A stretch of DNA of 64,000 nucleotides from Paragordius varius. Its lineage: Eukaryota; Animalia; Nematomorpha. A program made the position numbers and the translations under genes. The stretch lies in assembly GCA_964247055.1 (NCBI GenBank), contig OZ176056.1, forward strand, positions 3,658,001 through 3,722,000. The letters are read 5' to 3'. Of this stretch, positions 4,041 to 57,528 are shown in pieces (the stretch's first letter is position 1; each line of letters opens with the position of its first letter). Below the pieces are notes generated by a model. The model was not told where the DNA came from. It worked only from the letters and a program-made list of their open reading frames with translations, and ran no database searches.

Positions 4041-7000
4041 ATGGATTTAATTAAAAAACAGGCCACTAACGATGATTGGGATACTGATCCCCATTTTATC
4101 GTATAATTTATGTTATTTTAGAATAATCTAACTGAGGAGGATTCTAGATGGGGATCAAAAACTGTCGAAGGTTCTGGCCATTCTGAATCATTAAAGTAAT
4201 TTTTAATTAGTTTAACCCTTTTTATCGGCCTAATAATTATTTCTTGCTTTATATTTTTAGTATGAATGAATTACGTGATCTAGTCCAAAAATCGCATTCA
4301 GAAGTTATACAAGATAATTTCGCAAAGCACATGCCAAAAGCCTCATATGGATACGGTGGAAAATTTGGCATCGAAACCGATCGAATCGATAAAGTTTTTA
4401 ATTGAATTTATAAAAATTTGGTGAAAATGAAATTTTATATTTTTAATAATTTAATTTAAATATTATTATTTATGGTGGGCATAAGCGACCAAATTAATCT
4501 TGTTTTTTTAATTTTTTAAGCTTCACTTTAAAATAATCGCAACTATTTTTATACTATAATAGTTTATATATGGCTTGAAAAGTGATTAGTAAATTTTTTA
4601 TATTTTGCTGTCATTATTTTACTAATTTTTTTATGTTTTTTCAAATTAGTTTTATATATTTAAGAATAATTTTCATTTTATAACATATTTTAACTTGGCA
4701 TTTTTTTAATTTTTAACTCAATATATTTTATATTGTCACATGGGTAAAAATGCTTTTAGTAAATAATTATCAAATTTTAAATTTTTTTTAAATTTATTTA
4801 AGTATATAATTTTGTTTGGCATAAAGATAATCTTGACAATATTTTATAATTTGACTTTTACTTTCTCATAAAATTTAAATTTCTTTTACAATTAACTATG
4901 TCTTTTTCAAATTTGATTGTATCTATTCAAAAAAATCTAACCTAATAAATATAATTTATGTTAATAATTTTTTTAATTGTGTTCGAATAAACAATAATAA
5001 ATTCATAATATCAACCTATTATAATATGTTTAAATTTTTTATTAACACATATCTCTATGCTTTTTAATTGTTAAATTTAATTAGAAAATATTTCAATTTT
5101 TTAAATTTATCTGTGAACAGTTGTTGTTATAAATATTCTACACATTTAAAAAATTAAATAAATATTATTTATTCTCTTTTGTTGTCTTTAATTCAAAAAT
5201 TTAAAATTACCAATTTAATAATCTTCCTATTTGTAAATATTTTTATTCAAAAACTTTATATTATTTGAAATAATTTTTAGAATGCACATGGTATAGATTA
5301 TATTGCTGATGTTCCCAAGCACTCTTCACAAACAGGTGATTTTACTTTGGACAAAATATTTTTTTTATAAAATAAAAAATTAATCGAAATAAAAAAATCA
5401 AATGCTTAATTAAAAGATTATGTTTTTGGGTTTGGCGGCAAATTTGGACTTCAAAAGGACCGACAGGATGTTTGCGCACATGATTGGAAACATGTGGAAA
5501 AGGTGGAAAAACATTCTTCACAAATCGGTTTTTAGAAACTTTTTTATCAATAAAATTTTTAATTCATCTTTTTTATTAAATATATCTTTTTTTATATTAT
5601 AGTTATAATTTTATTGAAAAAATTATTTATTATATATTTTATAGATTTTAAAATAATAAAATGATATCGTTTACATAGTTTTTTAAAAATTTGATATTAT
5701 TTATATACATAATTTCCATTTGAAAATTAAACAATCCCTTAACATATAAAACACCGTAGGATACGGATTTTAATCATATCTGATATTTATTTTTTATGCA
5801 TACTGTAATATTTGTTCTTTATGACTCATCAATTATGTTAACTTTTATAATTTTTTAACATTTTTGCAATAGTATGTAATTTTTATTTTTGTTTGCCACA
5901 TACTGTTTTTATTTAAAATTTATTAAAATATTATTATGAATCGGAAAAATATGATTAAAAAAATTATTTTCCCGCCTAAGCCTAAAAGATGCAAAAAATT
6001 GATTTAAAAATAAAAAATTTTATAATCTTGATATTCATGAAAAATTTTGTTAATGTATAAATTATCAATTTTTACGCTAATTGGCCGTTTTACTAAAAAA
6101 TCTTTTTTGGATACGTTTAAGATTTTGATATTAAGCAAGCCTTTTTATTTAAAAATTATATCATAGTTTTTTTATTTATTCAATTGAAAACAGAGCCCAC
6201 ACCTCTTAACTACTTAGTTTGCTTATAAAATGCACTTCGATCTTCGAATAATATTCTCATTTTTTAGTTAAAATCATTCAAAGTTGTTTATTTTTTTAAA
6301 AAAACTAGGTATAAATATTGATGAATAGAGTTATTTTAAGACATTATAATTAATAACCAAAAACAATAAAACAATTGATAATACATTTTATTTTTTTGAC
6401 ACACATATATTTTTTATGGAAATTATATATAACTTTGAAATTAAGATATTTTTACTCAAGTTTTTACCAAAAAAATGCGGATAGGGTCACTTCGAAGAGT
6501 GGTTAGTTTTGTTTAATATAATCAAGGATTGTTATCATTTTCAAAAAGCAATAGTTTTTATGATCAACCTTACTTACATATTAATAAATAATTATTTGAA
6601 AATTTAAAACTAAAATTTTCTTGTTATAAAAAATAATTTTAACTAATTTTGGTTTTAGATTATGCAAAAGGTTTTGGAGGCAAATTTGGCGTTCAAAATG
6701 GCAGCCATGATACATGTGCCCTCGCCTGGGATCATAAAGAAACTATTGAACCACATTCTTCACAAAAAGGTTTTTTTTCTACAATATTTGATAATTGATA
6801 AATTTTATTATGACAATTTTTTCAAATTAACGGAATAGTTTGATATTTGCTGTTATTACAGTTGTGAAAATTAAATTAAACATATATATATATATATAAT
6901 TAAAATAAAGTTTAATATTTTAACTTTAAAGTTTTTATAAGGCCATATATCTATATACAGTCAAGCCTATTTTGGTCGGATTTTTTTGTAAGATGACCCC

Positions 7001-9025
7001 TTTTTTACCATTTTTGTAAATCTTTTGTCTTCTGGGTTTATTTTTTAAATGGTAGTAAAAATTTATAAGCATTTGAAATTTTGAACAATATAAGTGTATA
7101 GATCGCCATAATTAATTCAAAATACTTTAATTAAGTTTATACAGTCTTAAAAATTTTAATAAAAATTATTAAGAATTGATAGGGCATATTTTTTCAGGTC
7201 ATTTTTTTATAGGTTATTTTTTTGAAAAACCTTTTAAAGATTTTTTTATTAAATTATTAAAAAAATTAGATTACGCTAAAGGGTTTGGGGGAAAGTATGG
7301 CGTTAATCAACAAAGTTTCGATAAATCAGCCCTGGGTTGGGATTATAAGGCTGAAATTGAATTACATCCTTCTCAAATAGGTTTTTATTTTAAAACAATT
7401 TTTTTCTCTGTTAATCTAATAAATTTTATTACCATTTTTTTATACATAAAGTTTTATTGCTTAATTTGTGAGGTTTAATTATTGTAAAGTAGCTTTTAAA
7501 TTTAAAAATGCTGTTACAATTAGTTGATAAAACAATTCGAAAAGCATCGGAAAAGTCAATATCAACTCCTACACAAAATGTCGATATAATGGGAAAAACA
7601 AAAGGTTTTTTTTACATTTTTTTTTAAGTTGCACAGAAAATTAACTCTAAAATGGTTTATTTTACGATATATTGATTTGTTAAATGTAAAGAGTTTTCTA
7701 AAATTTGATAACATGATAAGATAATCTTTGCAAAATATAAATGGGCCTTACACAATCATAAAATAATTTTTCGTTGTTCAATTAAAAGCTTGTGTAAAAT
7801 TCATTCCTAAATTTTTACAAAAAATCCGTTATAAACTTTAATAATGTTTCACCCGAAAAATTTTCTAACTCCTTTAAAAATTATGTAATTTTATTTATTA
7901 GAATTTGGTAATTATATATTTTCACCCCATTTTAGTATCTACTTTGCAAAACTCCAAAACTACTGCAAGCAATGGTATTAAAACGCATGAAATTGATAAT
8001 AATGTTAAAGCTATTGAAACAAATGGAAATGATTCCAATACAATGATAGATGTTAAAAATGCCAAAAAATATTTTGAAAATGAAATTAGGAGTCAAACTC
8101 AATCGGCCCGAAAGCTTTCTGCTATTCAACTTAAAATTCAACGTTGGGATGCAAAATGTACAAACAATAATTGTAATGGTAATACAATTAATAATAATTT
8201 TAATTCACCCAAAACGAACACTGGTATAAGTAGTATAAAGAAAAGTAATGTGGTTGAAATGGAGAAAGAAAAACATTTAACGAGTAATAGTTTACTAAAG
8301 TATATATGGATTTTATTAAAAAAATTGTTTTAAAAGATTGTATTTGGCAGTGACGAGGGCTATTTTAAGCCATATCTGTATTTTAAATGGATAGTTTATG
8401 AGTTTTTTTGCTAAGTTGAAAATTTTATTAGTAACACTATTGAATTCATTATGAAAAATTAAGTATTAATATTAATGATAAAATGAATTTAAGGCAACAA
8501 TCTAAATAAAATATCCTTTTAACCATTTAAAATACAGATATGGCTAATAAAAGCTCTCGTGACTGTATATGATAGTCAACTTAGGGTAAAAATAAAATGC
8601 ATATATTCTTACAACGCATTAATATATATATATATATTATATATAAATGGGAAATATTATTTGCCTAAAGTTATTTTATGGAATTTTTTTGCCATTAGTC
8701 ATTACTGCTGATATATGCTATCTGACAATATTTATCGTAAAAATTAGCATTGTAATTTTTATTAATATAATATATTATATCAAATTTTTAATTTGTTTTA
8801 AAAGTATTTATTTACTATAGCTTTTTGGGTTTTTAAAAAATGTAATATTATAACAAGCTATTAGCTATAGATATTATGGTTTATTGTTAATTTTGTATGA
8901 TAACATGTTGACTTTAAAATGAAGTAGGGGCATTGGTTTTATTGGGATTAAAGTTATGATGCCACCTAGTATTTTAATATTTTTGGCCAGTTATAAAGTT
9001 TGTCTTTATGCAATATTTCAAAAAA

Positions 9026-9068
<43 letters not shown>

Positions 9069-10862
9069 CATTCCGAAAATACAATATAAAATGCGATTTT
9101 TTCGTTTTCTCTTCCTTTTGTCCATTAATATTTCCTGTAACTGTATATGATTATAAATTTTTATCCTTACTATATATCATGAATCATATATCAAAATGTT
9201 TTTGCATGCATATTATTAGATGGAACAAAACATCAATTTAACCATGATTCTACACCAACGTCTATAAGTAAACCTGAAACCAATAATATTACATCACCCA
9301 ATAAAACTTTTAATGTATACTCAAATCCAAAAACTATTGAATCGACCGATTTCAATCATCAAAATCTTGTAAGTCCTACCCTAATATCAAATGATAATAG
9401 CCCTCAAATAAGCAATGAATTGGATAACATAGAACCAATAAATAATTTATATAATAAAAATGATTTACAAGAGATAAATGGTAATACCACAAGTTACGTC
9501 AAAATTAACGTTAAAGATAAAATTAAAAACTTTCAAAATGGCACACAAACACCAACTAAAAGTCCTGTAGTTAAAAAGGAAGATGGTATATCCAACAATG
9601 AACACGAATTAAAGTGTCATATTGTAAATCAAGTCGAAACAAAAGCAAATAATTTGGAAAATGATTCTCGGGATACATTCAACGATCATAATAACTGCAG
9701 TAAAAATGATATTGCCTTTAAATCAGAATCGTTGAGCAATCAAAATTCACCCCAATTTAATAATTGTAACATAAATTTACCAAACGGAAAAACTACTGAA
9801 CACATATTATCAACTGAAAATAACTATGCACTTTATCAAAATTTGTCTGAAGTTCAAACAACGCCAGAAAAGGAAATTGTTAATAAAAGTAATGGTGATA
9901 TTCATAACATACCACCATCCGAATCTGTATTAACTCATAATACCCACAATGGTTTAAATCATGCAAATTATAATAGCTCATCAGATATTAATGTTGAAAT
10001 TGAATCTTTAAAGACTCCTGAAAATTTGGGTATTAAAGCCATAGCTTTGTACGATTATCAAGCAAGTATGGAAAAAAAGATTAAAAAATATAAATTTATT
10101 TTTTTTAAAAAAAATGGATTTTATTTTTGTTTCCAAAACGGTCAAAATTTAAAATTATTTTTAGAGGATGGAATTGATTATTTTTAACATTTTTTAATTT
10201 TAAAATGTGTTTTATTAGCTTTTTTTGAGAAAAATTGTAATTCAAAGAATATTTGAATAATAATTAATATATTTATGTTTTTTTATTATTGTAGACGAAG
10301 ATGATGAGTTAACATTCGATCCAGGCGAACTTATAACGCATATAAATAAGGTATTTTTTTATATTCAAAAATAATTTATTTATTCAATATACTTTTTTGT
10401 AAAGTATTACAGTGAGCTCCCCTCATAATGAAATTAATAGACGAAGGAATAATTATTTTATGTTGATAAATTTTTACATAACTTAACTCGCTAGTTAATG
10501 AGTATTCTCAAATTATTATGTTAGTTTTTTAGATTTTCAACCAATAAAATATGATAATCATTTTAAGAAAAATCTTAACATGGATAATAACCCATTATAT
10601 ATATTCCTATATTAGCTGAATTATAAGGAGACTACAATAAATTAAATAAATTTTTGTTTCTCATATTTTTATCAATCAAATTTTTATACTTACGTTAGTC
10701 AAAAACAACCTTTTGATATTTTATACCCAAAGATACATTTAAAAATTATTTATTTTATTGGTAATATAGATTGATGAAGGGTGGTGGAATGGAGTTTGCC
10801 GAGGGAAATTTGGCTTATTCCCAGCCAATTATGTACAATTAGTTGAGGAACAATCAAATTAA
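4041..10862 (+). CDS. CTTN: Cortactin, ~672 aa; exons 4041-4100, 4122-4195, 4261-4393, 5281-5335, 5417-5527, 6659-6769, 7270-7380, 7524-7604, 7936-8223, 9220-10065, 10295-10350, 10770-10862
   Basis: NTA motif [22 protein letters not shown]; four ~37-aa cortactin repeats (GYGGKFG/GFGGKFG..HSSQ), three of them on 111-nt exons; C-terminal SH3 ([33 protein letters not shown]). All junctions are GT-AG and in phase; total 2019 nt. The start codon and linker exons are less certain. Confidence 0.95.
8348..8565. mobile_element. MITE with CAGT termini (pogo/Tigger-like) in a cortactin intron
   Basis: ~45-bp imperfect TIRs: CAGTGACGAGGGCTATTTTAAGCCATATCTGTATTTTAAATGG and CCATTTAAAATACAGATATGGCTAATAAAAGCTCTCGTGACTG. 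TA on the right flank only. Confidence 0.7.
9034..9067. repeat. (TA)17 microsatellite
   Basis: Direct reading. Similar (TA)n tracts at 20100-20125 and 55755-55784. Confidence 0.95.
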
Positions 10863-22982: not shown

Positions 22983-23258
22983 CAGGAATGTCCAACATGG
23001 CTTCACGCGCCCCATTTTTGGATCAAAAAATCCGATCGACCGCATAAAATATATTGACAAATTTTTATTTGATTTCAAACATAAGACTGTTTAAATCTAC
23101 TACTTTTTTAACAATTTTCGCTAGCTCTCCGAATTCGGCTAAATCAGAAAAATTGTAGTTAAGAAAACCATTTATACCTAGATTTTGTTACATTTTGTAT
23201 TTAAAATTTCGCGCGGGCTTCAAAAATATATTAGAGGGCCGAGTGTTGGACACATCTG
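22983..23258. mobile_element. Old hAT-type MITE
   Basis: Imperfect TIR CAGGAATGTCCAAC / GTTGGACACATCTG with GC-rich subterminal motifs; the 8-bp flanks match at only 5/8. Confidence 0.55.
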
Positions 23259-23301
23259 ATCTTAAGATATCTAATGAAAAAAAAATTATTAGGTTTAATA
23301 G

Positions 23302-23569: not shown

Positions 23570-23586
23570 TTCTGTCGACGAAGACG

Positions 23587-27212: not shown

Positions 27213-27285
27213 GATCGGATGTTGAGCAGAGGGAGGCCCCCAGGCGGTATCCAGACCGAGTCCGAAAACCTCCGAAGCGTTTTTT

Positions 27286-27300
27286 AGAGGAGGAAGAGAA
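27286..27300 (+). other. Polypurine tract
   Basis: AGAGGAGGAAGAGAA directly abutting the 3' LTR. Confidence 0.9.
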
Positions 27301-39226: not shown

Positions 39227-39885
39227 TTAAGAATATATTTTTAATGGCAGTTCCCCTACAATCTTTGAACCGTCTAGATTTAAGGCGTAATTGTGATCTA
39301 CGGGGTTATCAAAGCATTTGATTATTAGATTTTCCAATTGTTCAGGATTTGTTACAAAATGTTTTGAAGTCACCTTAATTTATTAAAAAAAATAACTTCT
39401 AATTCATCAATCTTCGCTTCAACTTTTTCAATGACATCCTTCATATCTAATTTTCTTTGAATAAATACTTGGACTTCTTTTGACACTTTTTCTTGCCATA
39501 CTTTATCTAAATAATCTTGTCTAATAAATTTATATAATTTTTGCTGAATTATTCCATATATAATAATAAAAAATATATTTTACCGTATTAAAGCAACTCT
39601 TTTATTTTCTTTTTGATTAATTTCCAAAAGTTTATCAATTTCTAACTGATGTTTATGGTCTTCCTCGCTTTTTTGTTCGCTTGTATGCGAAGAATCATAT
39701 TTGTTTTCAAAGTAATGCCTGATGGAATTAACCGTTGCTTTGTAATTTAAAAAGTATTCATGTTCTTCATCAGTTTTGACAGGCGATATATTAACTTTGA
39801 ACAATTTTGTTTTTCCAACCTTACGCAATTTGCGGGTAATCGAACGCGATATTAATGTTTGAAAAGTGGAACGGGTTGAAAGCAT
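39227..39885 (-). CDS. MRPS26: Mitochondrial ribosomal protein S26 (mS26), 190 aa; exons 39885-39584, 39520-39397, 39373-39227
   Basis: Basic presequence, RK..KTKLFKV, LLEINQKENKRVALIR and SKHFVT..LENLI..FDNPVDHNYALNLDG, resembling mS26 ([31 protein letters not shown]). 573 nt in phase. Confidence 0.85.
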
Positions 39886-39908
39886 GGCTTTCACTCATAT
39901 GATAATAA

Positions 39909-40453
39909 ATGAATGAATTGAATTTTGTGGAGAAAGAGGAAAAATTGGGATACTTTGATATTCCGCCTATTAAATACGAATTTTTGGATCATCCTGCCGA
40001 TATTCAAATTCATGGTTGGGGTAGCACTTTACCTGAAGCTTTTGAGCAGGTATTAACCAAAGTTTTATAAAGTAAGAGACTGCTATGGGAATGTTTGCTT
40101 ACATGACAGAAATCGAAAAAGTTGACATTCAAACCACTTGGACTGTTGAATGCAGTGGACATGATTTAGAAAGCTTGTTATATAACTTTCTTCAGGAATT
40201 CCTTTACTATTTTTCGGCCGAAAATAATTACATTGCTCGTAAAGTAAAAGTCTTATCCTTTATCAAATCCCAATCACCCATTAATTCGGAAGAAGACGAA
40301 TACGAATATAAAATTACGGCAAAGGGTTTTGGTGAAAGTTTTGACTTGTCAAAACATACTCAAGGGACTGAAATTAAAGCTATAACATACTCTTGTTTAC
40401 AGGTTATTGTGAAAGAAACACAATGTGATACATATGTGATTGTTGATATATGA
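39909..40453 (+). CDS. ZBTB8OS: Archease (RtcB tRNA-ligase cofactor), 171 aa; exons 39909-40049, 40079-40453
   Basis: YEFLDHPADIQIHGWG..EAFEQ|TAMGMFAYMT, GESFDLSKHTQGTEIKAITYS and terminal YVIVDI*. Confidence 0.95.
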
Positions 40454-40547: not shown

Positions 40548-43443
40548 ATGACAAATCACACTTCGACAGATGAAAAGGATTTGTCTGAAACCACGGACAC
40601 TTCAAAAACTAATGCCGCGCCTCTTATAATTACAACTGAAGAAGAGAATAATATTATTTTGGATGAAATTATAGCTGTTGCGGCAAAATCTAGTCCTCTC
40701 ATATCTCATAATGCCTTGGTAAGTCATGTGTCATAAAAGTGTACTTATCAAAAAATTTTCTCGGACATTATCATTAGAAATATTATTTTTTCATAAGCTA
40801 ATGTGAGTTTCAAAAAATTATGTTTTAGCTAATGTTGCCTCATTGATCTGATAATATATATTAGTACCTGAACCATGTGTTGCTCAGAAATGCGGTTTTA
40901 TAAAATAAGTATTAATACTTAACTCTTTTAAAATAAACTGTAATAGTATTTGTTGTTAGTGGTAAAGGTAGGAAAGTATATAAAGGTTAAAATTCAGAGT
41001 ATAATATATATATATATATAATGTTATTTAGAAAGATATAAATGACAAAAATTTCGAATTGGTAGTCAAAAATTTGAGCATGAAACGGTGTAATTATAAT
41101 TAGGTTGCGACTGATTTTTGTTCAAATCTTTGGAAAAAAAGTTCTCTTACGTAGTTTTGCTTTGGAGCCATTGTTTTTATATTTAAATAAAAATTGCATT
41201 GCCCTTGATTTTATTTTATTCTTTAATATACTAGTTATATGACTAGTATGTATTTGCAATGGAAACCGGACATTTAATTTTATTAAATTTTGAGAAATCC
41301 TAGTAAAATAAGCGTTAAATCATTAAGCATTTGTATTTGAAAATAATGAGCAGTGGATATTATCGAATTTTTATTATAACCACCCAATTTAATGTGCATA
41401 TGTAGTGAAAATATTATTTTAACATCCTCTTCACCATTATAAAAGTTATGTTTTATTTGAAAAGAGTTCGAAAACTAATATTGTATTAGATTCTAATAAA
41501 TTGTAAGGAATTTGCCAGGGGTAGTAATTATTTGCTAACTAATCAAAGACGTCAGATAAAAGCAGGCCAAAATATTATTGTGGATCCCATTTTGTTTATC
41601 TGCCCTTAAAACTACACACATGCGCAATTTAAGTCCGCCAAAAGTAGCGTATTCTTTATTCAGTAATTATATGGAAGCTCGAGCCTAAAAATAACATTTC
41701 CCGCACACTATTCATCAGAGGTAGAAGGCTGTTAACAGTCATCTCTAGTAAAAACATATGATGAACATTCTCCATTGATTAAACATGTGTATGGTTCGTT
41801 GTCATAAAGAGAGTGGGTGCTTTGGTCGAGACCACACAACTGCGAAGGCGCAAAAAACAAATTGACAGAAGCATTACATGTATTACAAAAGACAATTAAT
41901 AGATGTCTACGAGCAATGGGTAAGACCAAAAACTCGGTGATTGTGGAACTCATAAAATTTGAACGAACTTTAAACTGAAAATAGTGACAATAAAAAGCTG
42001 CTTCAACGTCGAAAATATTTTTTGCTCTGAATAGCGAAGGGTGAAGAGAAAAACGCTTTATTTTGGAAAAGTTATGGCTTCTACCTTGCTAAACTGATCC
42101 ATAGACACCTAGGCAAATCGTTTTGTCAAGAATTGCTTTGTTTTGGTGACTCCAGAGCGGTTTGTGCATATTAAACGTTTATAATTCGATAAAATCGTTA
42201 GCCAAAAAATGTATTTAATTAATCAAACCATGTATTAATTGAAACTGACAAAGTGATATGATACATGCAATGCACATAGCAAAACCAGTGAAAACTTTAA
42301 AAATGCTTGAAAGAGAACATTTCCGTTTGCGCCAACCTCTCTTGACCTGACACCCTCTGACTATCACCACTTCCCATGAATGGGCACATACCTGCAAGCT
42401 TAAATAATCTCAAAGACGTTGGAAAATGATTGGACCATATGCCGCAAAAGACAATTAGCTTTTCTGGCATGGCATTCATATATTATTTAAAAGATGGGCT
42501 AAATGTGTAGAAACCGATGAGCAAATTACATTATTTTTACCAAAAAGCCGTTAAAGATTTGATTATTTGTGGTAAATAACTCATTTATGCAAACTAAGCA
42601 AACCGGAGAACGGATATGTTTCGTCTATCATTTTCTATATTTTGTTTAAGGAGTACAATTTAAAATCTTTAAATAATTAATAAAAGGTAAAATGTATTAC
42701 TTTTATATATTAATAGGGATCAACTTCAACCATAGATTTAATTTTGGAGCCATCGCGTGTTCCTATAACTTCTGACATCTCCGTTGGGGTAAAACGGAGC
42801 TTGTCCCCCGACCTGATTAAATCTAGCAGCGATGATGATGATATTAGCAATAAACGATTAAAAAAATCAGCTTCGGAAATTAAAGTAAGACCCGTAACAA
42901 AGAAAAAAAGTCGCAGCAAATCAGCCATAAAATGTGACATTTGTAAAACTAGTATTGGAATCTTAGGTATATTTTTTGAGATAGCTTTATTTCTGCTAAT
43001 TTTTATACAGTAAATATTAAATTTTTTTAAACTACCATATTGAAACTCTGATTTTTTGAAAAGTACCATATTTTTCAAACTTCAATGTTTAATTATATTA
43101 TATCTATCGATTAGGGTTGTGAAATAAGAAGTAGGGATAAAAATTAATACAGTGGTAAATCTAGATGAAATAATTTTGCTTTTTTGGGTCGAAAATTTTT
43201 ATAATCTTTTACTATTTTTATTTAAATTTTATCTTTATAATTTTGTTTTCAGTTTAAGGTTATTAAAAACAAACTTTATGTAAAATAACATTAGGTTATG
43301 ATTGTCGGTGCCAAGGTAAATTTTGTAGTCAACATAGATATCCTAGTGAACATGCCTGCTCTATTGACTACAAAAAGCTTGGAAGCCAAAAAATCGAGAA
43401 AGATAATCCAAAAATAAAACCTATTAAAGTACCAAAAATATGA
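40548..43443 (+). CDS. AN1-type zinc-finger protein (ZFAND3/5/6-like), 189 aa; exons 40548-40718, 42717-42966, 43295-43443
   Basis: CDICKTSIGILGYDCRCQGKFCSQHRYPSEHACSIDYK..KIEKDNPKI matches the AN1 finger and tail of ZFAND5/6. Exons are in phase (570 nt); linkage of exon 1 is inferred. Confidence 0.82.
41700..42580 (+). mobile_element. Decayed mariner (Mos1-like) relic in ZFAND intron 1
   Basis: TEALHVLQKTINRCLRAMGK; HIAKPVKTL; DLTPSDYHHF; FWHGIH..KRWAKCVETD. Confidence 0.8.
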
Positions 43444-43635: not shown

Positions 43636-46600
43636 TCAGTGGAGTGCAATAGTGAAAAGTTTGGACCTGTAAAGAGAGTATATTTTGGGTGGTTCTAAAT
43701 GCCATTTCATTAAAAAATTATGGTTTTATCAATTTTACCTTTAACCTTATATCTAGCAGCAGGATAATTGTGAGATAATAAATTATTTTCAACAGCATCA
43801 TTATTACTATATAATGCAGCATAAGGCATTTGGTTATTAACAAAATGTTCATTATTTATGGGAAACGCTGTTGTAAGATTTAAATCATTTTGAATAAATG
43901 CCGCCGGCGTTGATAGTATATGAGCAAATGGTGGTTGAATTTTATTACCTTTAGAGTTAAAATTTGAAGGTGTGTTAAATGCCAACGAAAATCGATTTCG
44001 ATCGACTATCGCTTTACGAGAAACTAGGGAGTTACTTTTAACGTTTGGCCCATTACCATTAGAATTTTGCAGAGCTGTCGTTGGAATCCTTTTCTCTACT
44101 CCTGAAGCATTATTATATTCGCCTTGAAAATTTTGATTTTCCATCATTGCTGGACATTGAGCTATAACATTGAAATCTGGACAAGATAATCGTTGAAGTG
44201 ATCTGGTTGCATTTATGTACCTGGGGTGAATATCATCTTTAAAGGCTTTAAATTTTGGGATATTTTGCTTTTTTGGATTATATTTTTCTTTTTTGTGTAC
44301 CTCATTTACTTCAATGTTAGGCGGATTTACATGTTTAGTTAACCGTTGTGGTTTGCTACTGCGACTAAATTTTAATGATGGTTTAAATAAATGCCTTCGC
44401 TTAATACCATTAACACAACTTTTTCCTAGAGTTTCTAGGGTATAGTTACCATTTTCTTGGGTGGTTACTTTGCTGATATTTTCGGAATCAAAATTATTAT
44501 GATCGACTTTATCATTCATTTTCATATTTATATCAAAATGGTCATCATTGTTATTTGCGCCATTTGTCAAAGGTTCAGAAGTGTCTTTCGATTGATTTTG
44601 TCGCTTATTACTTGGTTTTGGAATTGAATATATGGCATTTGGATCTACATCAATTTTTCTCTGTAACAAATTAGAGCCATCTGATCGAACCTTCGTACAC
44701 TCGCCCTGTTTTAGGTTACATGTAATGGTTTCCTCGTTGTTGTTTATCTGTGGTTCATTCAAGTTGACTTTTTCTTTTATATTTAAAGTTGTTAAGTTTT
44801 CAGGGTTTTTATCATCTTTTTCTGTGCTAGTGGTATTAGTTGTGGGCTTAGCTATCAAATTATTTTTTTGTTGGAAAAAAGTATGAATTTCATTCAAAAG
44901 TGCGGAATGTTGATTTGCGTTGGTTTCTGAGGTATTGGAATTATTATTTAATGTCCCAGGCTGCTCTGTGATTTCCGTTTCCAAAGGGGACCCATTGGAT
45001 TCATTTCTAACTGTATGATCATTATCGATTAGCGCATCATTTTCACACTCAGATTCTGTGGTTGTAAGGGAGGATTTTAGTTTATTGCTTTTCAATTTAG
45101 TTTCATCAGTATTGTTTTCATTATCAGTCATGCCAATCGATTCAGATTTTATATTTATATCCCTTAATTTTTGAACAAGCGGGCTTTGAACCAATTCTTC
45201 CAATAAGCTGGGTGATTTATTTCCAAAATCATTTGCCGCTGCACCTTTGGATTTAAGTTCATCAGTTTCACACTTTCTTAAAGTCATTTTTTGATTTTCT
45301 TCAGGCTTTTCCATATGGGGTGGCAGATTGCATTTTATTTCACAGCCACTTCTCTCATTCAATGTGGATGGCTCGTTATTGGTTTCTGTTGGTAAAAATT
45401 GATTTTTATTATGGATTTTATTGATCTGAGCTTGTTGTAAATGTTGGTTTAATATTTTCAATGAACCAGTCATTGGTAGCTCATCGCTATTACCTAACAT
45501 TATTGGTGGATTAATGCTAAACTCCTCAATAGAGTTTCGACAATTTTGATCATCGGGTAGAATAATATGGGGTTTTGGTGCTTGAAATGGCGGTGGAATG
45601 GGATATGATTGGGGTGAAATAAAGTTTGATTCTAAGGAGTGTCCCTTTGTAGTTTTTTTATTAGTATTGACTTGTATAATTTGATTGGAATTCAAATCAA
45701 ATGCGACACATTTATTGTTTAGCGGTATTTGAGTAGAACTAATCCCATTGCCATTATGTGCCATGATTGAGTCTTCAAGTGCTTTTTGTGTTTCATGAAA
45801 GCTATGTGGATTCGTCATTTGATTGTGATGTTCAATGAATATGGGATAAGCTTGGACATATTGCATAACTGGGGAAGGTGATGCCATTAATTTAATACTA
45901 TTTAAACTAACTTTTTGTTGGTCTCGATCGTAGTGGGGAACTAAATTTTCCATTTTATTCAAATCTTTTTGGGACAATTGCCCGTTTTCTGGTATGGAAT
46001 ATATGTCATTGCTCAAATCCATCGAAAATCGTGATTGACCATTACCACAAATTTTACTATCTTGTTGATGATGCAAGGTATCAGGTGTTAACTCGCTTTC
46101 ACCAAGTGTAAAGGCCCATGAAGTAGGCAACAAAGATTTATTGTAACGTTTCTTATATCGATCCGGCATTTTAGAGGATGTTAACGAAGATGTGGATAAG
46201 GGGTCCGGCCCAAATGTTAAACCGCTATTGAATCCGGTTCCATTCACATACTTATTGAATTCCTAAACGGGAGCAAAAAATTTATTTTGGATTAAAATGA
46301 ACTAAATATTTTTAGTCTTTGGTCGGGATTTTCACAAATCTTTTCTGAAAAAAAAACGTTTCCTATAATACCGTTTCCCGTATAAATTGCAAAAAAGTTT
46401 TAAATGGTTACAATCCCATTCGTTGTAAAATGGTTCTAATTTAGGTATCATTTTTTAGAATTTACAGAACCGATCTTTGATAGTATGCGAATATCTATCC
46501 GGAAAAATATAAAACATATATAAGCTTTAAATCTTAATTGACTTTTCTCTAAAATCTAACTTCCATGGTCAAATTAAATATAAATTAGTATTAATAAGTT

Positions 46601-49600
46601 TTATAATAAAAATTTTGATTCTGTAACGTTTCTGAAAAATCTTTGCGATTCCTGTTCGAATCGTTAGAAAAAAATGTGTTAAATATGTTACCTTATAATA
46701 CTTTGCTGAAGCTTTGCTCGAGTTACTACGGCCCAAACTGAAAAATTTAAAGGGTGTACTACTGTTAAGACTTGATGTGTTTTTATTTTCCTTTTTGTTG
46801 TTCTTTTTACCATTAAATATCCCGGACGGTAAATCGACATAGGACATATGAAGGGCTTCATTTGCGTCATAATTCATAGGTTTTGAACCCATCATAGAGT
46901 TGTTGGTAAATGTCAAATTTTGTGGATGTGTATTATCATTTATTAAGGAATTGTAATGGCCTCCAAATTTACGTGTTAACCGGGAATTTATGGATCCATC
47001 TATAAAAATAAGAGTCAAGATTAACAATCATACATATACAGTAAAAAGTGAAATTATACGGACAAAACGTCAAAATATAAAGACAATTTTTTTTCTAAAA
47101 GACTATGATGCTTTTTCAATCCTTAATTTATCCAATTAAAATAATTTAATTACAATCGTATGATACATAAATTGCTTGTGTTATCAATTTACATCTATAT
47201 TTGCTACTTTATAGTTTGAAACCATAAGTCATTATTATAAAAATTAAGATTTAAAAAGTATGTTTGTCTTTTAAAAAAAATATTTATTTTTATATTTTTT
47301 ATCCGTATAATTTCAATTTTTACTGTAAAATTTATATGTATAATTAAACGTTTTATTTAGTATTATAATACTAAATAAAACGTTTCATTACATTTAAGTT
47401 CTGAGGGGATATTGGTAAATGTATGATCAACTGGGGTGTGCCCATCATGTAACATGTGCAAATTTGTTGGAATCGATTGATGTATCAATGGTGCAGTGCC
47501 GGGAATATTGTAAAAGCCTACTCCTAAAAATATCGAAAAAATAGAGTATATAAATTCAAGCCCTTACCTTAGGTAAAATAGTTAAGAAACCTGCTAAAAG
47601 TAAAATACTTTTAACTTTTGTATAGTATACTTATATTTTACCTAGCGGGTTTGTTAGATGAGGTGATTTATTAAGAGGTTCATGACCCCAGATTTTTTTA
47701 TTCATACGAGTTGGCAAAGTTTGCATTTTCCAATCATCATTCCCATTATTATATAACGGAGACAGACTCATCTTGTGGGCTGATTTACCATTAAATGTGC
47801 CAAATCTGTTTGCTACATAATGTAAATCATTTTTGTCATTTTTGTTTTTATTCAAGTTAAATGTCGGGGAATAGTGATAATGGTTGTTTGAAAGACTTAA
47901 ATAACTCATGCTGTTTCGATACGTTCTATCCTTGTTAATTTCATTGGCGAGATGGGTATTATTTGATGGCGGTCTGCGTTGCGTTAAAACTGTCATAGTT
48001 AGCGGTTTTTCTGACCCACTTTGGGCAATTAGTTTAGAAACTTGGCCATGGCTAAGGAATTGAATGTGTACACCATTAACCTATATAAAGCATATCGGAA
48101 AATCAAAAATTAAATATATTAATATTTTTTAAATTTTACATTGATTGATAAATATAGGAAGGGTTTGGTGACCCGTCTTAAAAATGACTTGATCTACCAT
48201 ACTAGATTATATTATATAATAAATAAAAGAAAACGGACTGGACTTAAACATTTTATAATTTATACTATTTTTTGGTTATTTTAAATATATATTATATCAA
48301 ATATCCTTATGTTTCAATTTTCATGGTTTTTTTAAGTGAGGTTACCACGGTCATACATGCGTAATGTTTGTAACCTTAAATAAAAAATTTGTGAGATTTG
48401 TCGAATTGAAATAGTTTGCCAATAAATACATGCGCTTTTTGATATTTTGCGCTAATAATATATAAGTTTTATATAAAAAGCAGTCTTTTTTGATGCGCAT
48501 TTGGCGATTTTTTTATCAATTACATAAAAAATTTACTGTATTAGAGATATCGCGCCACTTTTGAATGGTAATTTCTTAAAACTTTTTTACTTACTTCAAT
48601 TATATGATCACCCTCCTTGAGATCAGCTTGATGGGCTGGACTGTTTAATTCGACGCGTAAAATAACGTGTGGACTTTGTTCTATTAAAATTAAATGTAAA
48701 ATTATTTTTAGTGCTATAATTTTGAAAATAAATTCTCCGTTTATTATAAAGGCTTTTTATTACCAGACAAAGTTTGCGGGATATTTTTTGGCCCAGTGAG
48801 GATAAATCCATATCCTTTGATACCTCGATGCAAAAACACTACACGTTGGGCCAGATCAGAAGCGATAGGTTTTAACATGATATTTGATGACTGTGAAATA
48901 TATTTACCACTTAGGTCTAGGTTACTTTTGGACAAACAATCTAAATTGTGCCTTGTATCCATAAGATCATTTGTTTTATCAGATTGTTCCTTATTATTTA
49001 TAATGCTAAGTTGACTATTTCGGAAAGAAATTAATCCATCATTCACATTTTGATTCGTTATTGAAGGGGAGGGCGAAAATGTTTTAGGGCGAGATAATTC
49101 AGGATTTGCACACGATCCGGATGTATTATCGGCATATCGAGTAGTTTTTACTGTTCCAGATATAGGGTCAGTTTCTTTGACCGCTCTATCAAACAGTCTA
49201 GCAACAATATTTTCAGGTGGTGGCGGGTGATTTGGATTTGGGTTGAATGATACTTTACAGGCGGTTGGGGGAGACTCAACACTTGTTGTAGCAATCATAG
49301 TGTATGCTTCTTGATTATGCTGATCAGATTGTTTGCAAACGCTTTTATTGTTGCTTTGTACCAGCGAATTTAACAAAGGTGCAGTCAACGTTTTCGCAAT
49401 ACAACTACTATTAAAGTTTTGACTTGGGTTAACAGTGTACCCATCTGTGTCATCTGTGTCCAACCGAATGGCATTACAAATTTCTTCCAATGAAGACTGT
49501 TGATTTAAATCATCACTGTTTAAGCTTGATCCTTTTCCTATAATCAAATAGTTATAAATATTCATTGTAATGTTGTAAGGGCAAATACTTTTATTAAACT

Positions 49601-52600
49601 TATTTAATGAGGGTAAAAAGCATTTTTGTTTTAAATAAAATGCACGATAAATTGTCAGATTACAGTCCAACTGTGAAAAAACCACCAATAATAAAGTTTT
49701 AACCTACCAAAATTATAAAATATTTTTTCGGGATACATAGTAAAAAAAGAAGAATTATTATAGATATACCCTAATACTAGATAATTTTTTTATCAAACCT
49801 GATGTAACAGAGGAGCTGTTTTTGTCTTCGGTAGAAAGAAGGGATAATAGTGGAGAATCAAGGTTATTTGTGTTAGCCGGTATAGAGATTTCATCACTTC
49901 CCATATTTCTGAATGTTTTAAATGTTTCAGATTCATCATTATCTAAAATCCTATTTGTGGTTATGTGTAAGGGGGCATGATTCATATTCAGATTATTTAA
50001 TTGAATATTATCGTTACCCGGTGTAATGGGATTATAATTAATCAAATTATTAATAATGTTATTATTTATGCTATTATTGTATGCCAAAGTATTCGCTGGG
50101 CTGTTTTCATAAAAAGTATCATCAAATTTTGCATTTGACATTAGGCTTAAATTGTTGTTGTTTAAATGTTGGGTAGATGTAGTCGCCGCATTTATAAATT
50201 GAAAAGCATTATTTGATTCATGGACATAAGGGGAAGTTTTAAACGAATTTTGATTATGATTAATAATACTACTGGGGTTATGAGATAAACGCATGGAATA
50301 ATTTGCGATAAAAGTTGCAAGTTCATGATTTCCATATTCAGTGGCTGTTTGAGAGGGGGTTCGTCCAGCCAGGTTGGCAATTAAAGGGTTTGCACCTTTG
50401 TTCAATAGGAGGCATACACAATCGTTCTATAATACAACATAAAAGTATAATATAAATTAATTTTAATCAGAAAAAGTTTTTGGATCAACCTCAATAATAC
50501 GTTAGTTAAAAATTGTGGTAATTTAATTTAAGCGACAAAAATGATACACAAAATTCAATTTGCACCTGCTAGTTAAAATATTCGTGAATCGTTTTTCGCT
50601 TTACGAACGAGGAGCCTAGAAAGATAAAACTGTCCTACAAATCCATCAGATTAAAAAATGTAAAACTGGAATTAGAATGAGTTTTGCATGGATCGGAACA
50701 AAATTATATCGTAATATTATAAAAATCCATGGTAGTTCTTAGAATTATATAACCAAAACCAGGTTAATTTTCACAATGTCGGAGCTTGCACTTGAATAGT
50801 TCTTGATAGACGAAAATTAATTAGTTTCATCCCTATCGGTTGCTGCTTAGATTTTTAAAGCTTCTGGTTTAAAACACTGATTTAATAGCAATACAATGAT
50901 AATCCCAAAAATTTACCGCTTAACCTCATTATGAATTATCTAAAAATTCAAAATATACTTGGTTATGAATGGCTGCAATGTGGAGAGGGGTCTCACCATC
51001 TTTGTTAGGGCTATTGATATCGGCACCATTTGCAATTAGCATGTCCAAAATTTTGGGTTGTCCATAACGGCAAACCTAAAATTATAAAATATAATAATGG
51101 TTAAAATATATTTGGTAAAAGTTCACAAAAATTCTGTATTCAACAATTCAAAAATGAAAAAAAAACTGGTTTTTAAATATCAACCTTTACCTTATGTCGA
51201 TTAAAATACCGAAAATTTTACCATGATAAATTTATACATATTTAATTATAATTTATACATAATGTATTTCTTGCCATCCCATTTGATCAGAAACAACTTC
51301 AAGCGTGTATCTTTTGTCATTTTCCAGCAAAAGTTTAGCACACAACGGGTCCCCTGAAAAAATTGAAAAAGAAATTGATATTTGCCGAGTTAAAGAAGAC
51401 AATATATAAATTAATTTCACAAAACTTAAATTTAATATATATATTAAATATATCTTAAAATCATTGATTTTACCTTGATTGGAGAGGAGATGGTGTAATG
51501 GTGTTAAGCCAGTCGCGTCTTTAACATTGGGGAAAGCACCAAGTTCCAACAATTTCTAGGGTAAAAAATTTATTGTGATATTAAATATGGATTAAAAATG
51601 AATAAAATATGGATTTAAAATTATATTAAAATGGTTAGCAAGGGGGGGTTAAAATATGCGATTTTTAAAACTAGGGATATAAGTTAGCATAAAAAATCAA
51701 TTTTGCAACTACATCGGCTTAGATATAGCGTTTAAATTGGAGATCTTTGAGAAGCTAAATCAATTACATCTGCATATATTGATTGGTAGGACATACATAA
51801 AATAAAGTAAAATGGTACTTTATACATTATTAAAACAGGTTTTTTAAAATATTAGGCAAAATTTTGTATTAAATCTTAAAATTAATATCAGTATATACTT
51901 TGACAGCTATAGCTTTATTCATTTGAGCGGCAACATGAAGAGGTGATAAGGATTGCGTCGTTTTAGCTCTAAAGTCTATGTGGGCACCACCCTTTATTAG
52001 AGTTTCAATAAGGTCTGAAGGGTCCAGAATTTTTGTGGCAATAATTAATGGTGTATCTGGGTTCAGATGTATTAAAAAAGAAAAAATTTAAAATAATTTA
52101 GCGAAAATTAAAAAGTTTAATAAAGTTTTTGAGATAAAAAAGGAGTTTGTTATCTCTGTGTAATGTAATTTGTGAATGAGGAAATAAATTAACTTTTTCA
52201 CAATATAAAGGCATTGTGAAAATAGCATATAAATATGGATCGTGATTAGATAAAATGGTTTTCGGTTGACCTATTAAATACAATTAACTAACTCACATTT
52301 GTCTAAAAAGATTTTTGTTTTTATAATGTGTTATATGCCGACAATTTGTGACAAAAATAAAAATGTTACCTTTATAAATATTTGGAATTCAATTTTTAAA
52401 CTTTTAATTTTTAATCACACCATATAATTAAAACATAAAAAATATTTGATTGTGTTCATATGTGCGCCCTTGAAGGAGAAAAATTATTTTCTGTAAATTA
52501 ATTTTTTATTTATAAATGCCAGCGGTTCCTTACTTCTTTGTTTAGTTCCACCATGCGTTTCCCAAAAATTAGAATTAAGTTTCTGACATTTGCAAAATAT

Positions 52601-55752: not shown

Positions 55753-55787
<35 letters not shown>

Positions 55788-57528
55788 GTCGTATGATGTG
55801 AAATATTTTATAAAAAAAATTTGCTAAAATACATATTTTTAATCAAATAAAATGAACACAATGTAATAAAACTTCTTTATGCAATATGGTCACTTAAAAA
55901 TATTAAAATAAATTTGTAATTGTTTAGCTTAAAGCTTCATTAATCACTGTTTAAAAATGACATTGTACCCCTAAAAACCGTGTATCTTATAAATTAAATA
56001 AGGCCAGAAAGCTAACACTAAAAAAATAAATATATTTATAATTATTTTTTATTTGATCTAGCTATCAAATAATAAGTATTTATTAAAATCGCCAATTAAG
56101 TAAAAACCCAAATTCACTAGTTTCGATTCCTCAAACGGGTATTCGCTTTCCGTCGAGATGAATGAATGAATAAAAAATTATCTACTAGTAATGTTAATTT
56201 TTAGACAATCGAAATCAATAATTTTATAATTTTGTTATTATTTTTTATTTGACATTTTTAATTAATATAAATTTATATTTTATTACCTCCTGTAAGAGTT
56301 TCATGGAAGTTTGGATCAATGCCTTTATCACACATGGATTTGACTTTGGCCACGTGGCCCTTGTGCACGTGAGATAAAAACCGTTTTTGTTTCGGGACAG
56401 AATTGATCTCCTTCAAATTTTTTATGTTTGTTTTGGGGTCCCGATATACACGGCGTTTGTATCTCAACTAATATAATAATACAATCACACTTCAGCGTAA
56501 ACAATATCCAATAATAGTTTATTATTTGGGGGAAAAGATGGTTTATATTTAACATTTTTTGAAAACTTGTTATGATAATAGCAATTAAAATATTATAATT
56601 TATTGATTCTTATATCAATCCCTTTCTAACCTAAATAATAATATTTTTATCATAAACTGTCGTCATTTTTGGTAAACATTAATATTTAATACACTATTTT
56701 GTTAATCATAAAAAAATAATGTCTACTTCAAGTGCGGGAGAAGTTTCGTTAAAATTACATTGAATGATTCGAATTTGTTCGTTAAGGAAACCTCCAATAT
56801 AACCATTTCCAGGTGGGAGATATAAACCATAATTAAGGGCTTCGTCTAGGGGCTAATTAATACATATTGTTTAGTGATATTTACTAAAGGTTAGATTGGA
56901 AATCACCCCTGAACTCGTCGATTTCACCAATATATTTTGTGTTATAAAATATCAAAAATTACCTATATTTTTTAATATTTTTAAAATAAGTTTTTGTAAT
57001 ATAACGTAATACAGAAAAAATAAACTATGTTAGTTACGAAGATAATCAAAAATGGGTTAAATATAAAAATATATAATCTATTTTTAGGGTGAATTTAAGT
57101 TTAAGGGAAAATTTTAGGTTTAAATGGCATATTCTCAAATTTTGCAAGGATTTTAGGTAAATGAGCCGGTTCAAGTAGCTTAAATATATTAATAATTTAA
57201 ATAAAAAAAAATTCTATTTTTATGTCTTAAGAAAGTTTCAATGCCTATTTTTTATAATGAAGCATAATTAGATCCTATATGTATTATTTGATTTAGCATA
57301 ATCAAATGACCCTATATCGCTAAAATTTTATTATAAAAAAATATTAAACGCTTATAAATTTTTCGATATATATTAAATCGAATCTTATACCTGACACAAA
57401 TTTTCCAACAATATTTGTTTGATATCTAAAATGGAATGATGCAATTCATAGGGCAGAATTCTTTGAAAATTTAGACATGGAACTTTTATTTTCACAACTA
57501 GCGGTTGTTGTTTAGTTCCGTTTTCCAT
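43636..57528 (-). CDS. SHANK: SHANK/ProSAP scaffold protein, ~2013 aa; exons 57528-57391, 56852-56727, 56467-56287, 52056-51899, 51555-51474, 51353-51259, 51075-50959, 50426-49770, 49703-48764, 48680-48595, 48080-47642, 47523-47392, 46999-46692, 46262-43739, 43694-43636
   Basis: SPN domain (LVVKIKVPCL..LNYGLYLP..LE|LRYKRRVY), KGIDPNFH, ankyrin repeats (TPLHH, GWQEIHY, GETPLHIAA) and a PDZ (GYGFILTG..DLKEGDHIIEVNG..HGQV). All junctions are GT-AG and in phase (6042 nt). The start, the last exon and the 49703 acceptor are least certain. Confidence 0.92.
54060..54230 (-). mobile_element. Possible Penelope-like retroelement fragment in a SHANK intron
   Basis: Frameshifted KSLVRTITK..LCSDFDYVFQILNRYGLSLRLADKI weakly resembles the PLE RT/GIY-YIG linker (L..NGYP..LI). 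Confidence 0.3.
56878..57127. mobile_element. Highly degenerate copy of the 21-bp-repeat MITE in a SHANK intron
   Basis: AAAAATTACCTATATTTT and TTTTTAGGGTGAATTT..TAAATGG segments match 30358..30749. Confidence 0.6.

What the first reader, a model, noticed from the sequence alone, without database searches (positions are those of the whole stretch)
4041..57528. Cortactin and SHANK are linked convergently, as CTTN and SHANK2 are in human
Seen: cortactin (+) and SHANK (-) face each other with ~33 kb between stop codons. Known: human CTTN and SHANK2 are convergent neighbours on 11q13, and Shank2 was first described as cortactin-binding protein 1. Inference: this may be an ancient microsyntenic pair of interacting proteins retained in a fast-evolving invertebrate genome. 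Caveat: about seven genes lie between them here, so it could be residual ancestral chromosome-level linkage or chance.
Basis: partly seen in the sequence, partly recalled or inferred. Interest (0 to 1): 0.72.

Follow-up and report, generated by a model that had tools for sequence, protein, structure and literature searches.

The report
Cortactin and Shank genes lie close
A hairworm-like animal really does carry its cortactin and Shank genes tail-to-tail about 33 kb apart, as humans do, but nothing I could test shows that this is an inherited arrangement rather than a coincidence of gene shuffling.

Summary
Observation confirmed. A cortactin gene (+, 4041-10862) and a Shank gene (-, 57528-43710) face each other, with 32,847 nt between the stop codons and no N in the window.

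Interpretation not established. The gap holds at least six unrelated host genes, a gypsy retrotransposon and other repeats. Shank's true convergent neighbour is an AN1 zinc-finger gene, whose coding region ends 270 nt from the Shank stop.

The window's closest available relative is the nematomorph Gordionus.
- No Shank exon lies within 10 kb of Gordionus cortactin.
- The archease/AN1-finger pair that abuts Shank here lies 2.0 Mb from cortactin there, on the same chromosome. The neighbourhood has therefore been reshuffled within the phylum.

No Shank lies within 10 kb of cortactin in a tardigrade, a filarial nematode, two rotifers or a louse. Two teleosts also show none, so the 10 kb reach is too short to be decisive.

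I could not obtain a Shank protein id, because every stop-free exon is too short for the length filter. Shank was therefore never mapped in another genome.

Best reading: chance proximity after intrachromosomal shuffling (about 0.55). Loose remnant of an ancestral pair: about 0.3. Misjoin: about 0.03.

The parts
4041..4100 (+). cortactin exon 1: start codon and acidic N-terminus with the DDW motif
   Evidence: Reading of the sequence. It aligns to the Gordionus cortactin N-terminus.
4101..4121 (+). 21-nt GT..AG mini-intron in cortactin
   Evidence: The sequence shows GTATAA...TTTTAG. The reading frame resumes in line with Gordionus cortactin.
4261..4393 (+). cortactin exon holding the start of the first HS1 repeat
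   Evidence: Pfam HS1_rep E 4e-6; splice sites read.
5416..5526 (+). cortactin HS1 repeat, encoded by one exon
   Evidence: Pfam HS1_rep E 1e-16; alignment A1.
6658..6768 (+). cortactin HS1 repeat, encoded by one exon
   Evidence: Pfam HS1_rep E 3e-14.
7269..7379 (+). cortactin HS1 repeat, encoded by one exon
   Evidence: Pfam HS1_rep E 2e-14.
9183..10073 (+). open frame holding the long low-complexity cortactin exon; the SH3 domain begins at about 10017
   Evidence: 68% identity to Gordionus over the SH3 start.
10294..10353 (+). cortactin SH3 middle exon
   Evidence: Weak Pfam SH3 match; 76% identity to Gordionus.
10770..10862 (+). cortactin last exon: end of the SH3 domain and TAA stop
   Evidence: Pfam SH3_2 E 6e-6; sequence read.
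23190..27500 (+). gypsy-type LTR retrotransposon in the gap
   Evidence: Pfam gag, aspartyl protease, RVT_1, RNase H and integrase matches. The LTR pieces 23302-23499 and 27301-27498 are 95% alike.
31925..32981 (+). gene for a glycine/tyrosine-rich protein with a hydrophobic N-terminus
   Evidence: ORFs; internal repeats.
37852..38298 (-). unassigned ORF lying head-to-head with the methyltransferase gene (labelled GEMIN8 in a scan note)
   Evidence: ORF listed. No Pfam match supports the GEMIN8 label.
38318..39163 (+). lysine methyltransferase gene (Methyltransf_16, METTL23-like)
   Evidence: Pfam E 1.5e-12.
39230..39894 (-). mitochondrial ribosomal protein S26 gene
   Evidence: Pfam MRP-S26 E 2e-9.
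39909..40453 (+). archease gene
   Evidence: Pfam Archease E 4e-28 and 6e-8. The best relative is Gordionus archease at 63% identity.
42717..43440 (+). AN1-type zinc-finger gene, convergent with Shank; its coding region ends 270 nt from the Shank stop
   Evidence: Pfam zf-AN1 E 3e-9. Its orthologue lies beside archease in Gordionus.
43710..46262 (-). Shank last exon: 845 codons of low-complexity sequence plus the stop
   Evidence: No Pfam family matches it.
47634..49703 (-). Shank PDZ domain, split over three exons (about 48747-48850, 48568-48672 and 47970-48080)
   Evidence: Pfam PDZ_6 and PDZ matches; reading of the sequence.
49761..52087 (-). Shank ankyrin-repeat exons
   Evidence: Pfam Ank families.
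56276..56852 (-). Shank N-terminal (SPN) domain and linker exons
   Evidence: Among solved structures only SHANK3 chains match: E 8e-8 and E 5e-4.
57388..57528 (-). Shank first coding exon, with Met at 57528
   Evidence: Open frame. It has no sequence match of its own.

Best explanation
Both genes are genuine single orthologues, and they do lie tail-to-tail 33 kb apart on one uninterrupted stretch of assembly. The most likely reason is not a preserved gene pair. In this lineage genes tend to stay on their chromosome while their order is reshuffled quickly. Some pairs that happen to be neighbours in humans will therefore also end up near each other by accident.

Shown here:
- the identity of both genes;
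- the unrelated genes and mobile elements between them;
- the reshuffling of this neighbourhood relative to Gordionus.

Inferred: that the proximity to Shank arose, or survived, without selection.
For: 1. The gap holds six unrelated host genes and a retrotransposon. An AN1-finger gene, not cortactin, is Shank's convergent partner.

2. The nearest available relative is Gordionus. Cortactin gives 382 summed bits against 298 or fewer for all other proteins. Archease gives 167 bits against 109.

3. In Gordionus none of the window's genes lies within 10 kb of cortactin.

4. Archease and the AN1-finger gene stay together in Gordionus, 6.5 kb apart and with the finger gene inverted. They sit 2.0 Mb from cortactin on the same 54.6 Mb chromosome. 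In the window they are 29-32 kb from cortactin.

5. No Shank lies within 10 kb of cortactin in:
- Hypsibius, where a KIF1-like kinesin is convergent instead;
- Brugia;
- Seison and Brachionus;
- Polyplax.

6. The vertebrate flanking gene liprin-alpha lies upstream of cortactin in cod and pipefish. It is absent from the window.

7. Nematomorphs are among the lineages reported to have lost the bilaterian linkage groups (PMC12359876).

8. Rough arithmetic, with assumed numbers. Two named genes fall within 33 kb by chance with a probability of about 66 kb divided by 107-290 Mb, that is 2e-4 to 6e-4. With a few thousand human-adjacent orthologue pairs, one to a few such coincidences are expected per genome.
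Against: For this particular pair the chance is small. The two proteins are known binding partners in mammals. The orientation matches human, and the gap size is close to the human one (about 31 kb, from memory).

The human paralogues fit an ancestral linked pair that predates the two vertebrate genome duplications. This is from memory and was not tested here: CTTN and SHANK2 on 11q13, HCLS1 on 3q13, SHANK1 on 19q13, SHANK3 on 22q13.

The 10 kb reach of the neighbour look-ups cannot see a Shank 30 kb away. Two teleosts gave the same negative result.

The position of Shank in Gordionus is unknown.
Confidence: 0.55

Rival explanations
1. Loose remnant of an ancestral bilaterian cortactin-Shank neighbourhood. 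The two genes were adjacent and convergent in the common ancestor. In this lineage they have never been separated by more than local insertions, although other genes and mobile elements moved in between.
For: The same two orthology groups occur in the same orientation, with a similar gap, as in human. The human order ...PPFIA1, CTTN, SHANK2, DHCR7... is given in PMC3561653.

The chance for this one pair is low. About two thirds of the gap (10.9-31.9 kb) holds no recognised host gene and carries the retrotransposon and other repeats, so it may be recent filler.

The distribution of the vertebrate paralogues fits a pair older than the genome duplications (from memory).
Against: Six protostome genomes show no Shank beside cortactin. 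No other vertebrate neighbour is shared with the window.

The neighbourhood is already reshuffled by 2 Mb between two nematomorphs. Six unrelated housekeeping-type genes lie in the gap.

In the microsynteny tables I could search, neither gene name occurs in one table. In another, cortactin occurs only in a cephalopod-only block whose stored gene list is cut off.
Confidence: 0.3
2. Selected proximity. The two binding partners are kept in one chromatin neighbourhood for shared regulation, so the arrangement is maintained or has re-formed under selection.
For: Shank2 was first described as a cortactin-binding protein (established knowledge). The cortactin SH3 domain is well conserved here.
Against: There are no expression data: no RNA contigs lay on 42-48 kb.

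Convergent genes share no promoter, and several genes with their own close-set promoters lie between the two.

The only proline cluster in the Shank tail (residues about 219-231 of the last exon) does not fit the cortactin-SH3 ligand consensus as I recall it. Adjacency is absent in every other protostome sampled.
Confidence: 0.07
3. Assembly artefact. A false join somewhere in the repeat-rich stretch between 11 and 32 kb brings two unlinked genes together.
For: The stretch is rich in repeats and mobile elements.
Against: The window contains no N. Cortactin and archease, which are 29 kb apart here, lie on the same chromosome in Gordionus, which fits true linkage.

Contigs of a second, independently sequenced sample cover the 42-48 kb part without conflict, except at a repeat at 47.0-47.4 kb. 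The 11-42 kb part itself was not tested with reads.
Confidence: 0.03

Closest known systems
Human CTTN-SHANK2 neighbours at 11q13.3
   Same: The same two gene families lie next to each other in gene order (order from PMC3561653). They are tail-to-tail with a gap of about 30 kb (orientation and human gap size from memory).
   Different: Here six unrelated genes and a retrotransposon fill the gap, and an AN1-finger gene is Shank's direct convergent partner.

The human flanking genes PPFIA1 and DHCR7 are absent. Liprin-alpha does lie upstream of cortactin in cod and pipefish.

This Shank shows no SH3 or SAM domain.
Conserved ancestral microsyntenic pairs (Irimia et al. 2012, PMC3514665)
   Same: Two non-paralogous genes lie close together in two distant phyla.
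   Different: Such pairs are defined by adjacency in several lineages. The figure legend I read says only that conserved pairs are enriched for particular orientations. That the enriched class is head-to-head is from memory.

Here adjacency is not seen in any of six other protostome genomes, the genes are convergent, and they are not direct neighbours. The paper's main text names neither gene, and its tables were not available.
Chromosome-level linkage with scrambled local order (as in nematode Nigon elements or fly Muller elements; established knowledge)
   Same: Two genes that are 29 kb apart here (cortactin and archease) lie on one chromosome in Gordionus but 2.0 Mb apart.
   Different: Only two gene positions were compared. 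No genome-wide comparison was made.

Membership tests
Cortactin/HS1 family | Tandem 37-residue HS1/cortactin repeats | tested here: met
   Pfam PF02218 matches four exon pieces with E from 4e-6 to 1e-16. A profile of three repeats retrieved 1351 proteins, and those whose names I looked up are annotated as cortactins.
Cortactin/HS1 family | Acidic N-terminus with the DDW motif (Arp2/3 binding) | tested here: met
   The sequence [10 protein letters not shown] is encoded in exon 1 and aligns with Gordionus cortactin. Function was not tested.
Cortactin/HS1 family | C-terminal SH3 domain | tested here: met
   Pfam SH3_2 E 6e-6 on the last exon and weaker matches on the middle exon. Identity to Gordionus is 63-76% over the three SH3 exons.
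Shank/ProSAP family | N-terminal SPN domain followed by ankyrin repeats | tested here: met
   Two exons match SHANK3 residues 47-75 and 91-149, and the SPN part matches no other family. Pfam Ank families match four downstream exons.
Shank/ProSAP family | SH3 domain between the ANK repeats and the PDZ domain | tested here: not met
   No SH3 match in any open frame between the ANK and PDZ exons. C. elegans SHN-1 also lacks it (PMC5432211), so its absence does not exclude membership.
Shank/ProSAP family | PDZ domain | tested here: met
   Pfam PDZ_6 E 4e-5 and PDZ E 9e-4 on one of the three PDZ exons. The match is generic and not Shank-specific.
Shank/ProSAP family | C-terminal SAM domain | tested here: not met
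   No Pfam match in the last exon. No SAM-like motif was found on the minus strand down to 27.5 kb. Two possible alternative splice ends give short tails without a SAM domain. No RNA was available to fix the true 3' end.
Conserved ancestral microsyntenic pair | The same two genes adjacent in several independent animal lineages | tested here: inconclusive
   There is no Shank within 10 kb of cortactin in Hypsibius, Gordionus, Seison, Brachionus, Brugia, Polyplax, cod or pipefish. The flank is too short, and Shank itself was never mapped elsewhere.
Conserved ancestral microsyntenic pair | No, or very few, unrelated genes between the two members | tested here: not met
   At least six host genes and a retrotransposon lie between them.

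The most novel reading that the evidence does not exclude
Cortactin and Shank, two proteins that bind each other at actin-rich membranes and synapses, have been chromosomal neighbours in tail-to-tail orientation since before the split of protostomes and deuterostomes. On this reading the pair survived even in a lineage that scrambled nearly all other gene order, which would imply a constraint on the pair.
Probability: 0.2. Interest if true: 0.6.

Novelty: already known. Interest (0 to 1): 0.28.

Why it matters
If the pair were truly ancient, it would be a rare case of two physically interacting, non-paralogous proteins kept as neighbours for more than half a billion years. Such a case would invite a search for a shared regulatory or chromatin constraint at a locus relevant to autism and cancer (11q13).

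As it stands, the window shows two ordinary orthologues whose proximity can be explained without any constraint. The useful by-products are:
- a first glimpse that nematomorph genes stay on their chromosome while local order is shuffled;
- a Shank gene without detectable SH3 or SAM domains.

Tried and rejected
1. Fetching Shank orthologues. Every stop-free Shank exon is too short for the length filter of the word-based protein search. The gene is estimated at about 1900 residues and the longest exon has 850.

2. An alignment that stacked the conserved exons on the long exon, to get round the length filter. I simulated it locally. It scored a SHANK3 fragment at only 6 bits, so I did not submit it.

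3. Reaching SHANK2 through compact vertebrate genomes. Cod and pipefish show only transposon remains in the 10 kb after cortactin.

4. Three neighbour look-ups failed because the exact product is not on record: Acropora, Steinernema and Mytilus. A second cortactin search aimed at cnidarians returned almost only vertebrates.

5. Published microsynteny and orthologue tables.
- Irimia 2012 and Simakov 2022 have no supplements held.
- Robert 2022 and the sea-anemone paper contain neither gene name.
- The hemichordate orthologue table lacks both genes in the stored part.
- The cephalopod table lists cortactin only in a cephalopod-specific block, together with a RhoGAP gene and a DUF2037 gene among others; the stored gene list is cut off.

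6. RNA support for the Shank 3' end. No RNA contig lay on 42-48 kb.

7. The label GEMIN8 for the ORF at 37852-38298 is not confirmed by Pfam.

8. My own recollection that nematode SHN-1 lacks a SAM domain was contradicted by PMC5432211, and I dropped it.

Spliced protein models were never joined. All searches were made exon by exon, by reference.
Full report
WHAT IS THERE

The window is very AT-rich (21-37% G+C) and contains no N.

Cortactin lies on the + strand.
- The start codon is at 4041, followed by the acidic motif [10 protein letters not shown].
- A 21-nt GT..AG intron lies at 4101-4121.
- Three complete 37-residue HS1/cortactin repeats are each encoded by their own 111-nt exon, with phase-1 introns: 5416-5526, 6658-6768 and 7269-7379. 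A further repeat is split over 4261-4393 and about 5281-5334.
- A helical region and a long low-complexity exon follow.
- The SH3 domain is split over three exons, and the stop codon is at 10860-10862.
- Evidence: Pfam HS1_rep with E from 4e-6 to 1e-16 and SH3_2 with E 6e-6; exon-by-exon alignment to a Gordionus cortactin.

Shank lies on the - strand, starting at 57528.
- Two N-terminal exons match, among all solved structures, SHANK3. For the SPN exon, nothing else matches significantly. The exon 56709-56852 matches residues 47-75 (E 5e-4). The exon 56276-56467 matches residues 91-149 (E 8e-8).
- Four ankyrin-repeat exons and a PDZ domain split over three exons follow (Pfam).
- An 845-codon low-complexity exon ends at the stop 43710-43712.
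- I found no SH3 domain between the ANK and PDZ exons.
- I found no SAM domain in the last exon, in two possible alternative 3' ends, or on the minus strand down to 27.5 kb.
- C. elegans SHN-1 likewise lacks the SH3 domain but is reported to keep the SAM domain (PMC5432211).
- No RNA contig was available to fix the 3' end.

The two genes are convergent, with 32,847 nt between their stops.

All searches used single exons by reference.

WHAT LIES BETWEEN

From 10.9 to 31.9 kb I recognise no host gene. The stretch holds:
- three copies of an element with 21-nt tandem repeats (about 11.1, 18.7-19.0 and 30.3-30.8 kb);
- two unassigned ORFs at 14960-15406 (-) and 21545-22138 (-), with no Pfam family;
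- a gypsy-type LTR retrotransposon at about 23.2-27.5 kb with gag, protease, RT, RNase H and integrase, whose LTRs are 95% alike.

Genes then follow in this order:

| Position | Strand | Gene | Evidence |
|---|---|---|---|
| 31925-32981 | + | glycine/tyrosine-rich protein | |
| 37852-38298 | - | unassigned ORF | |
| 38318-39163 | + | Methyltransf_16 methyltransferase | |
| 39230-39894 | - | MRPS26 | |
| 39909-40453 | + | archease | |
| 42717-43440 | + | AN1 zinc-finger gene | |

The coding region of the AN1-finger gene ends only 270 nt from the Shank stop. Shank's direct convergent partner is therefore this gene, not cortactin.

From memory, the human orthologues of the intervening genes lie on different chromosomes and none is on 11q13. 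The interval is thus not syntenic with the human CTTN-SHANK2 gap.

WHOSE GENOME

Among 150 cortactin-family representatives, the window's exons are closest to cortactin of the nematomorph Gordionus. Summed tblastn scores are 382 bits for Gordionus and 298 or fewer for all others.

The archease exon also finds Gordionus first, with 63% identity and 167 bits against 109 bits for the next hit. The Gordionus loci are equally AT-rich (27% G+C).

Another agent of this scan independently called the genome hairworm-like. I take the animal to be a nematomorph of a different genus.

IS THE PAIR CONSERVED ELSEWHERE?

The human order ...FADD, PPFIA1, CTTN, SHANK2, DHCR7... is documented in PMC3561653. The tail-to-tail orientation and the gap of about 31 kb are from my own knowledge.

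I looked at the called genes within 10 kb of cortactin in other genomes:

| Genome | Genes within 10 kb of cortactin |
|---|---|
| Hypsibius exemplaris | an LSM gene upstream; a 1710-residue KIF1-like kinesin (FHA and PH domains seen in its ORFs) convergent downstream |
| Gordionus | a PH/IRS gene upstream; four small genes downstream; no tblastn match to any gene of the window |
| Seison nebaliae | unrelated genes; a zf-AN1 gene lies 1.6 kb downstream but gives no tblastn match to the window's AN1 exon |
| Brachionus calyciflorus | unrelated genes |
| Brugia malayi | an alpha/beta hydrolase and a trehalase |
| Polyplax serrata | unrelated genes |
| Cod and pipefish | liprin-alpha directly upstream, as PPFIA1 is in human; only transposon remains in the 10 kb downstream |

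Going by the human order, the teleosts should carry shank2 as the next gene. I did not verify that for fish. If it holds, the 10 kb reach is too short to exclude looser linkage.

In the compact protostome genomes, 10 kb spans two to five genes. A tightly constrained pair should have shown up there.

THE MOST INFORMATIVE RESULT

In Gordionus, archease lies at 8,798,304-8,798,847 of chromosome OX940785.2. Cortactin lies at 10,799,526-10,810,846 of the same 54.6 Mb chromosome.

The two genes are 29 kb apart in the window and 2.0 Mb apart in Gordionus.

The AN1-finger orthologue (50% identity over the finger exon) still lies 6.5 kb from archease in Gordionus, but it is inverted. MRPS26, the methyltransferase and Shank exons are not detectable within 10 kb of archease.

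Genes therefore seem to stay on their chromosome while local order is shuffled quickly. This fits the report that nematomorphs are among the lineages that lost the bilaterian linkage groups (PMC12359876).

In such a regime an unconstrained ancestral adjacency would rarely survive since the bilaterian ancestor. A constrained one should be tight and visible in Gordionus.

CHANCE

Rough arithmetic, with assumed numbers:
- For one named pair, the chance of lying within 33 kb is about 66 kb divided by the genome size. The lower bound of 107 Mb comes from the 1679 windows of 64 kb noted. The upper figure of about 290 Mb is my recollection of the Gordionus genome size. This gives 2e-4 to 6e-4, or about 1e-3 if both genes are already on one 50 Mb chromosome.
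- The pair was noticed in a whole-genome scan. With a few thousand human-adjacent orthologue pairs, about one to a few such coincidences are expected per genome.
- Matching orientation adds only a factor of about four.
- That the two proteins bind each other makes the coincidence more striking, but that is a post hoc criterion.

VERDICT

The claim of an ancient microsyntenic pair is neither shown nor refuted.

| Reading | Weight |
|---|---|
| Chance proximity after intrachromosomal shuffling | about 0.55 |
| Loose remnant of an ancestral neighbourhood | about 0.3 |
| Selected proximity | about 0.07 |
| Misjoin | about 0.03 |
| Unassigned | the remainder |

Against a misjoin: the window has no N, cortactin and archease are linked in Gordionus as well, and contigs of a second sample cover 42-48 kb. 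The 11-42 kb part was not tested with reads.

The decisive step is to place Shank in Gordionus and in slowly rearranging invertebrates. It could not be done here, because no Shank protein id could be obtained (see Tried and rejected).

HOUSEKEEPING

No contig was taken for human and none was fetched. Primate cortactins appeared only as rows in two hit lists and were not used.

Two short SHANK3 fragments printed by the structure search were used once, in a local scoring test.

Noticed in passing
window 5416-5526, 6658-6768, 7269-7379: Each full cortactin repeat is encoded by its own 111-nt exon, bounded by phase-1 introns. Exon and protein repeat therefore coincide exactly.
   Followed up: partly
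window 43710-57528 (-): This Shank gene shows no SH3 domain, as reported for C. elegans SHN-1. It also shows no detectable SAM domain, which SHN-1 is reported to keep. The 3' end is unverified for lack of RNA.
   Followed up: partly
window 39909-43440; L009 10001-20544: The archease and AN1 zinc-finger genes are neighbours both here and in Gordionus, where they are 6.5 kb apart with the finger gene inverted. The head-to-head partners seen here (MRPS26 with archease; the unassigned ORF with the methyltransferase) were not found near Gordionus archease.
   Followed up: partly
window 47000-47400: A short element inside a Shank intron is extremely abundant in a related sample. Contig word depth there is about 9000, against about 4 elsewhere. 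Many inverted and skipping joints suggest a high-copy inverted-repeat element.
   Followed up: no
window 11110-11213, 18714-19041, 30333-30758: Three copies of an element built from 21-nt tandem repeats. One copy (30349-30758) forms a 121-nt inverted pair that is 93% complementary.
   Followed up: no
window 23190-27500: A gypsy-type LTR retrotransposon with open gag, protease, RT, RNase H and integrase frames. Its LTRs are 95% alike.
   Followed up: partly
window 31925-32981: A gene for a protein with a hydrophobic N-terminus followed by about 190 residues made almost only of Gly, Tyr, Asn and Ser repeats.
   Followed up: no
L003 13825-14708 (Seison nebaliae): A zf-AN1 gene lies 1.6 kb downstream of cortactin in this rotifer relative. 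It gives no tblastn match to the window's AN1 exon, so this is probably coincidence.
   Followed up: partly
L007 1-22999, L008 and L010 (cod, pipefish): Liprin-alpha lies directly upstream of cortactin in the same orientation, as PPFIA1-CTTN does in human. This vertebrate neighbour is absent from the window.
   Followed up: partly
L001 14458-22710 (Hypsibius): The introns and flanks of the kinesin gene next to tardigrade cortactin are filled with a short GT/C-rich microsatellite. It reads as long 'CLSV' or 'DRQT' open frames on both strands.
   Followed up: no
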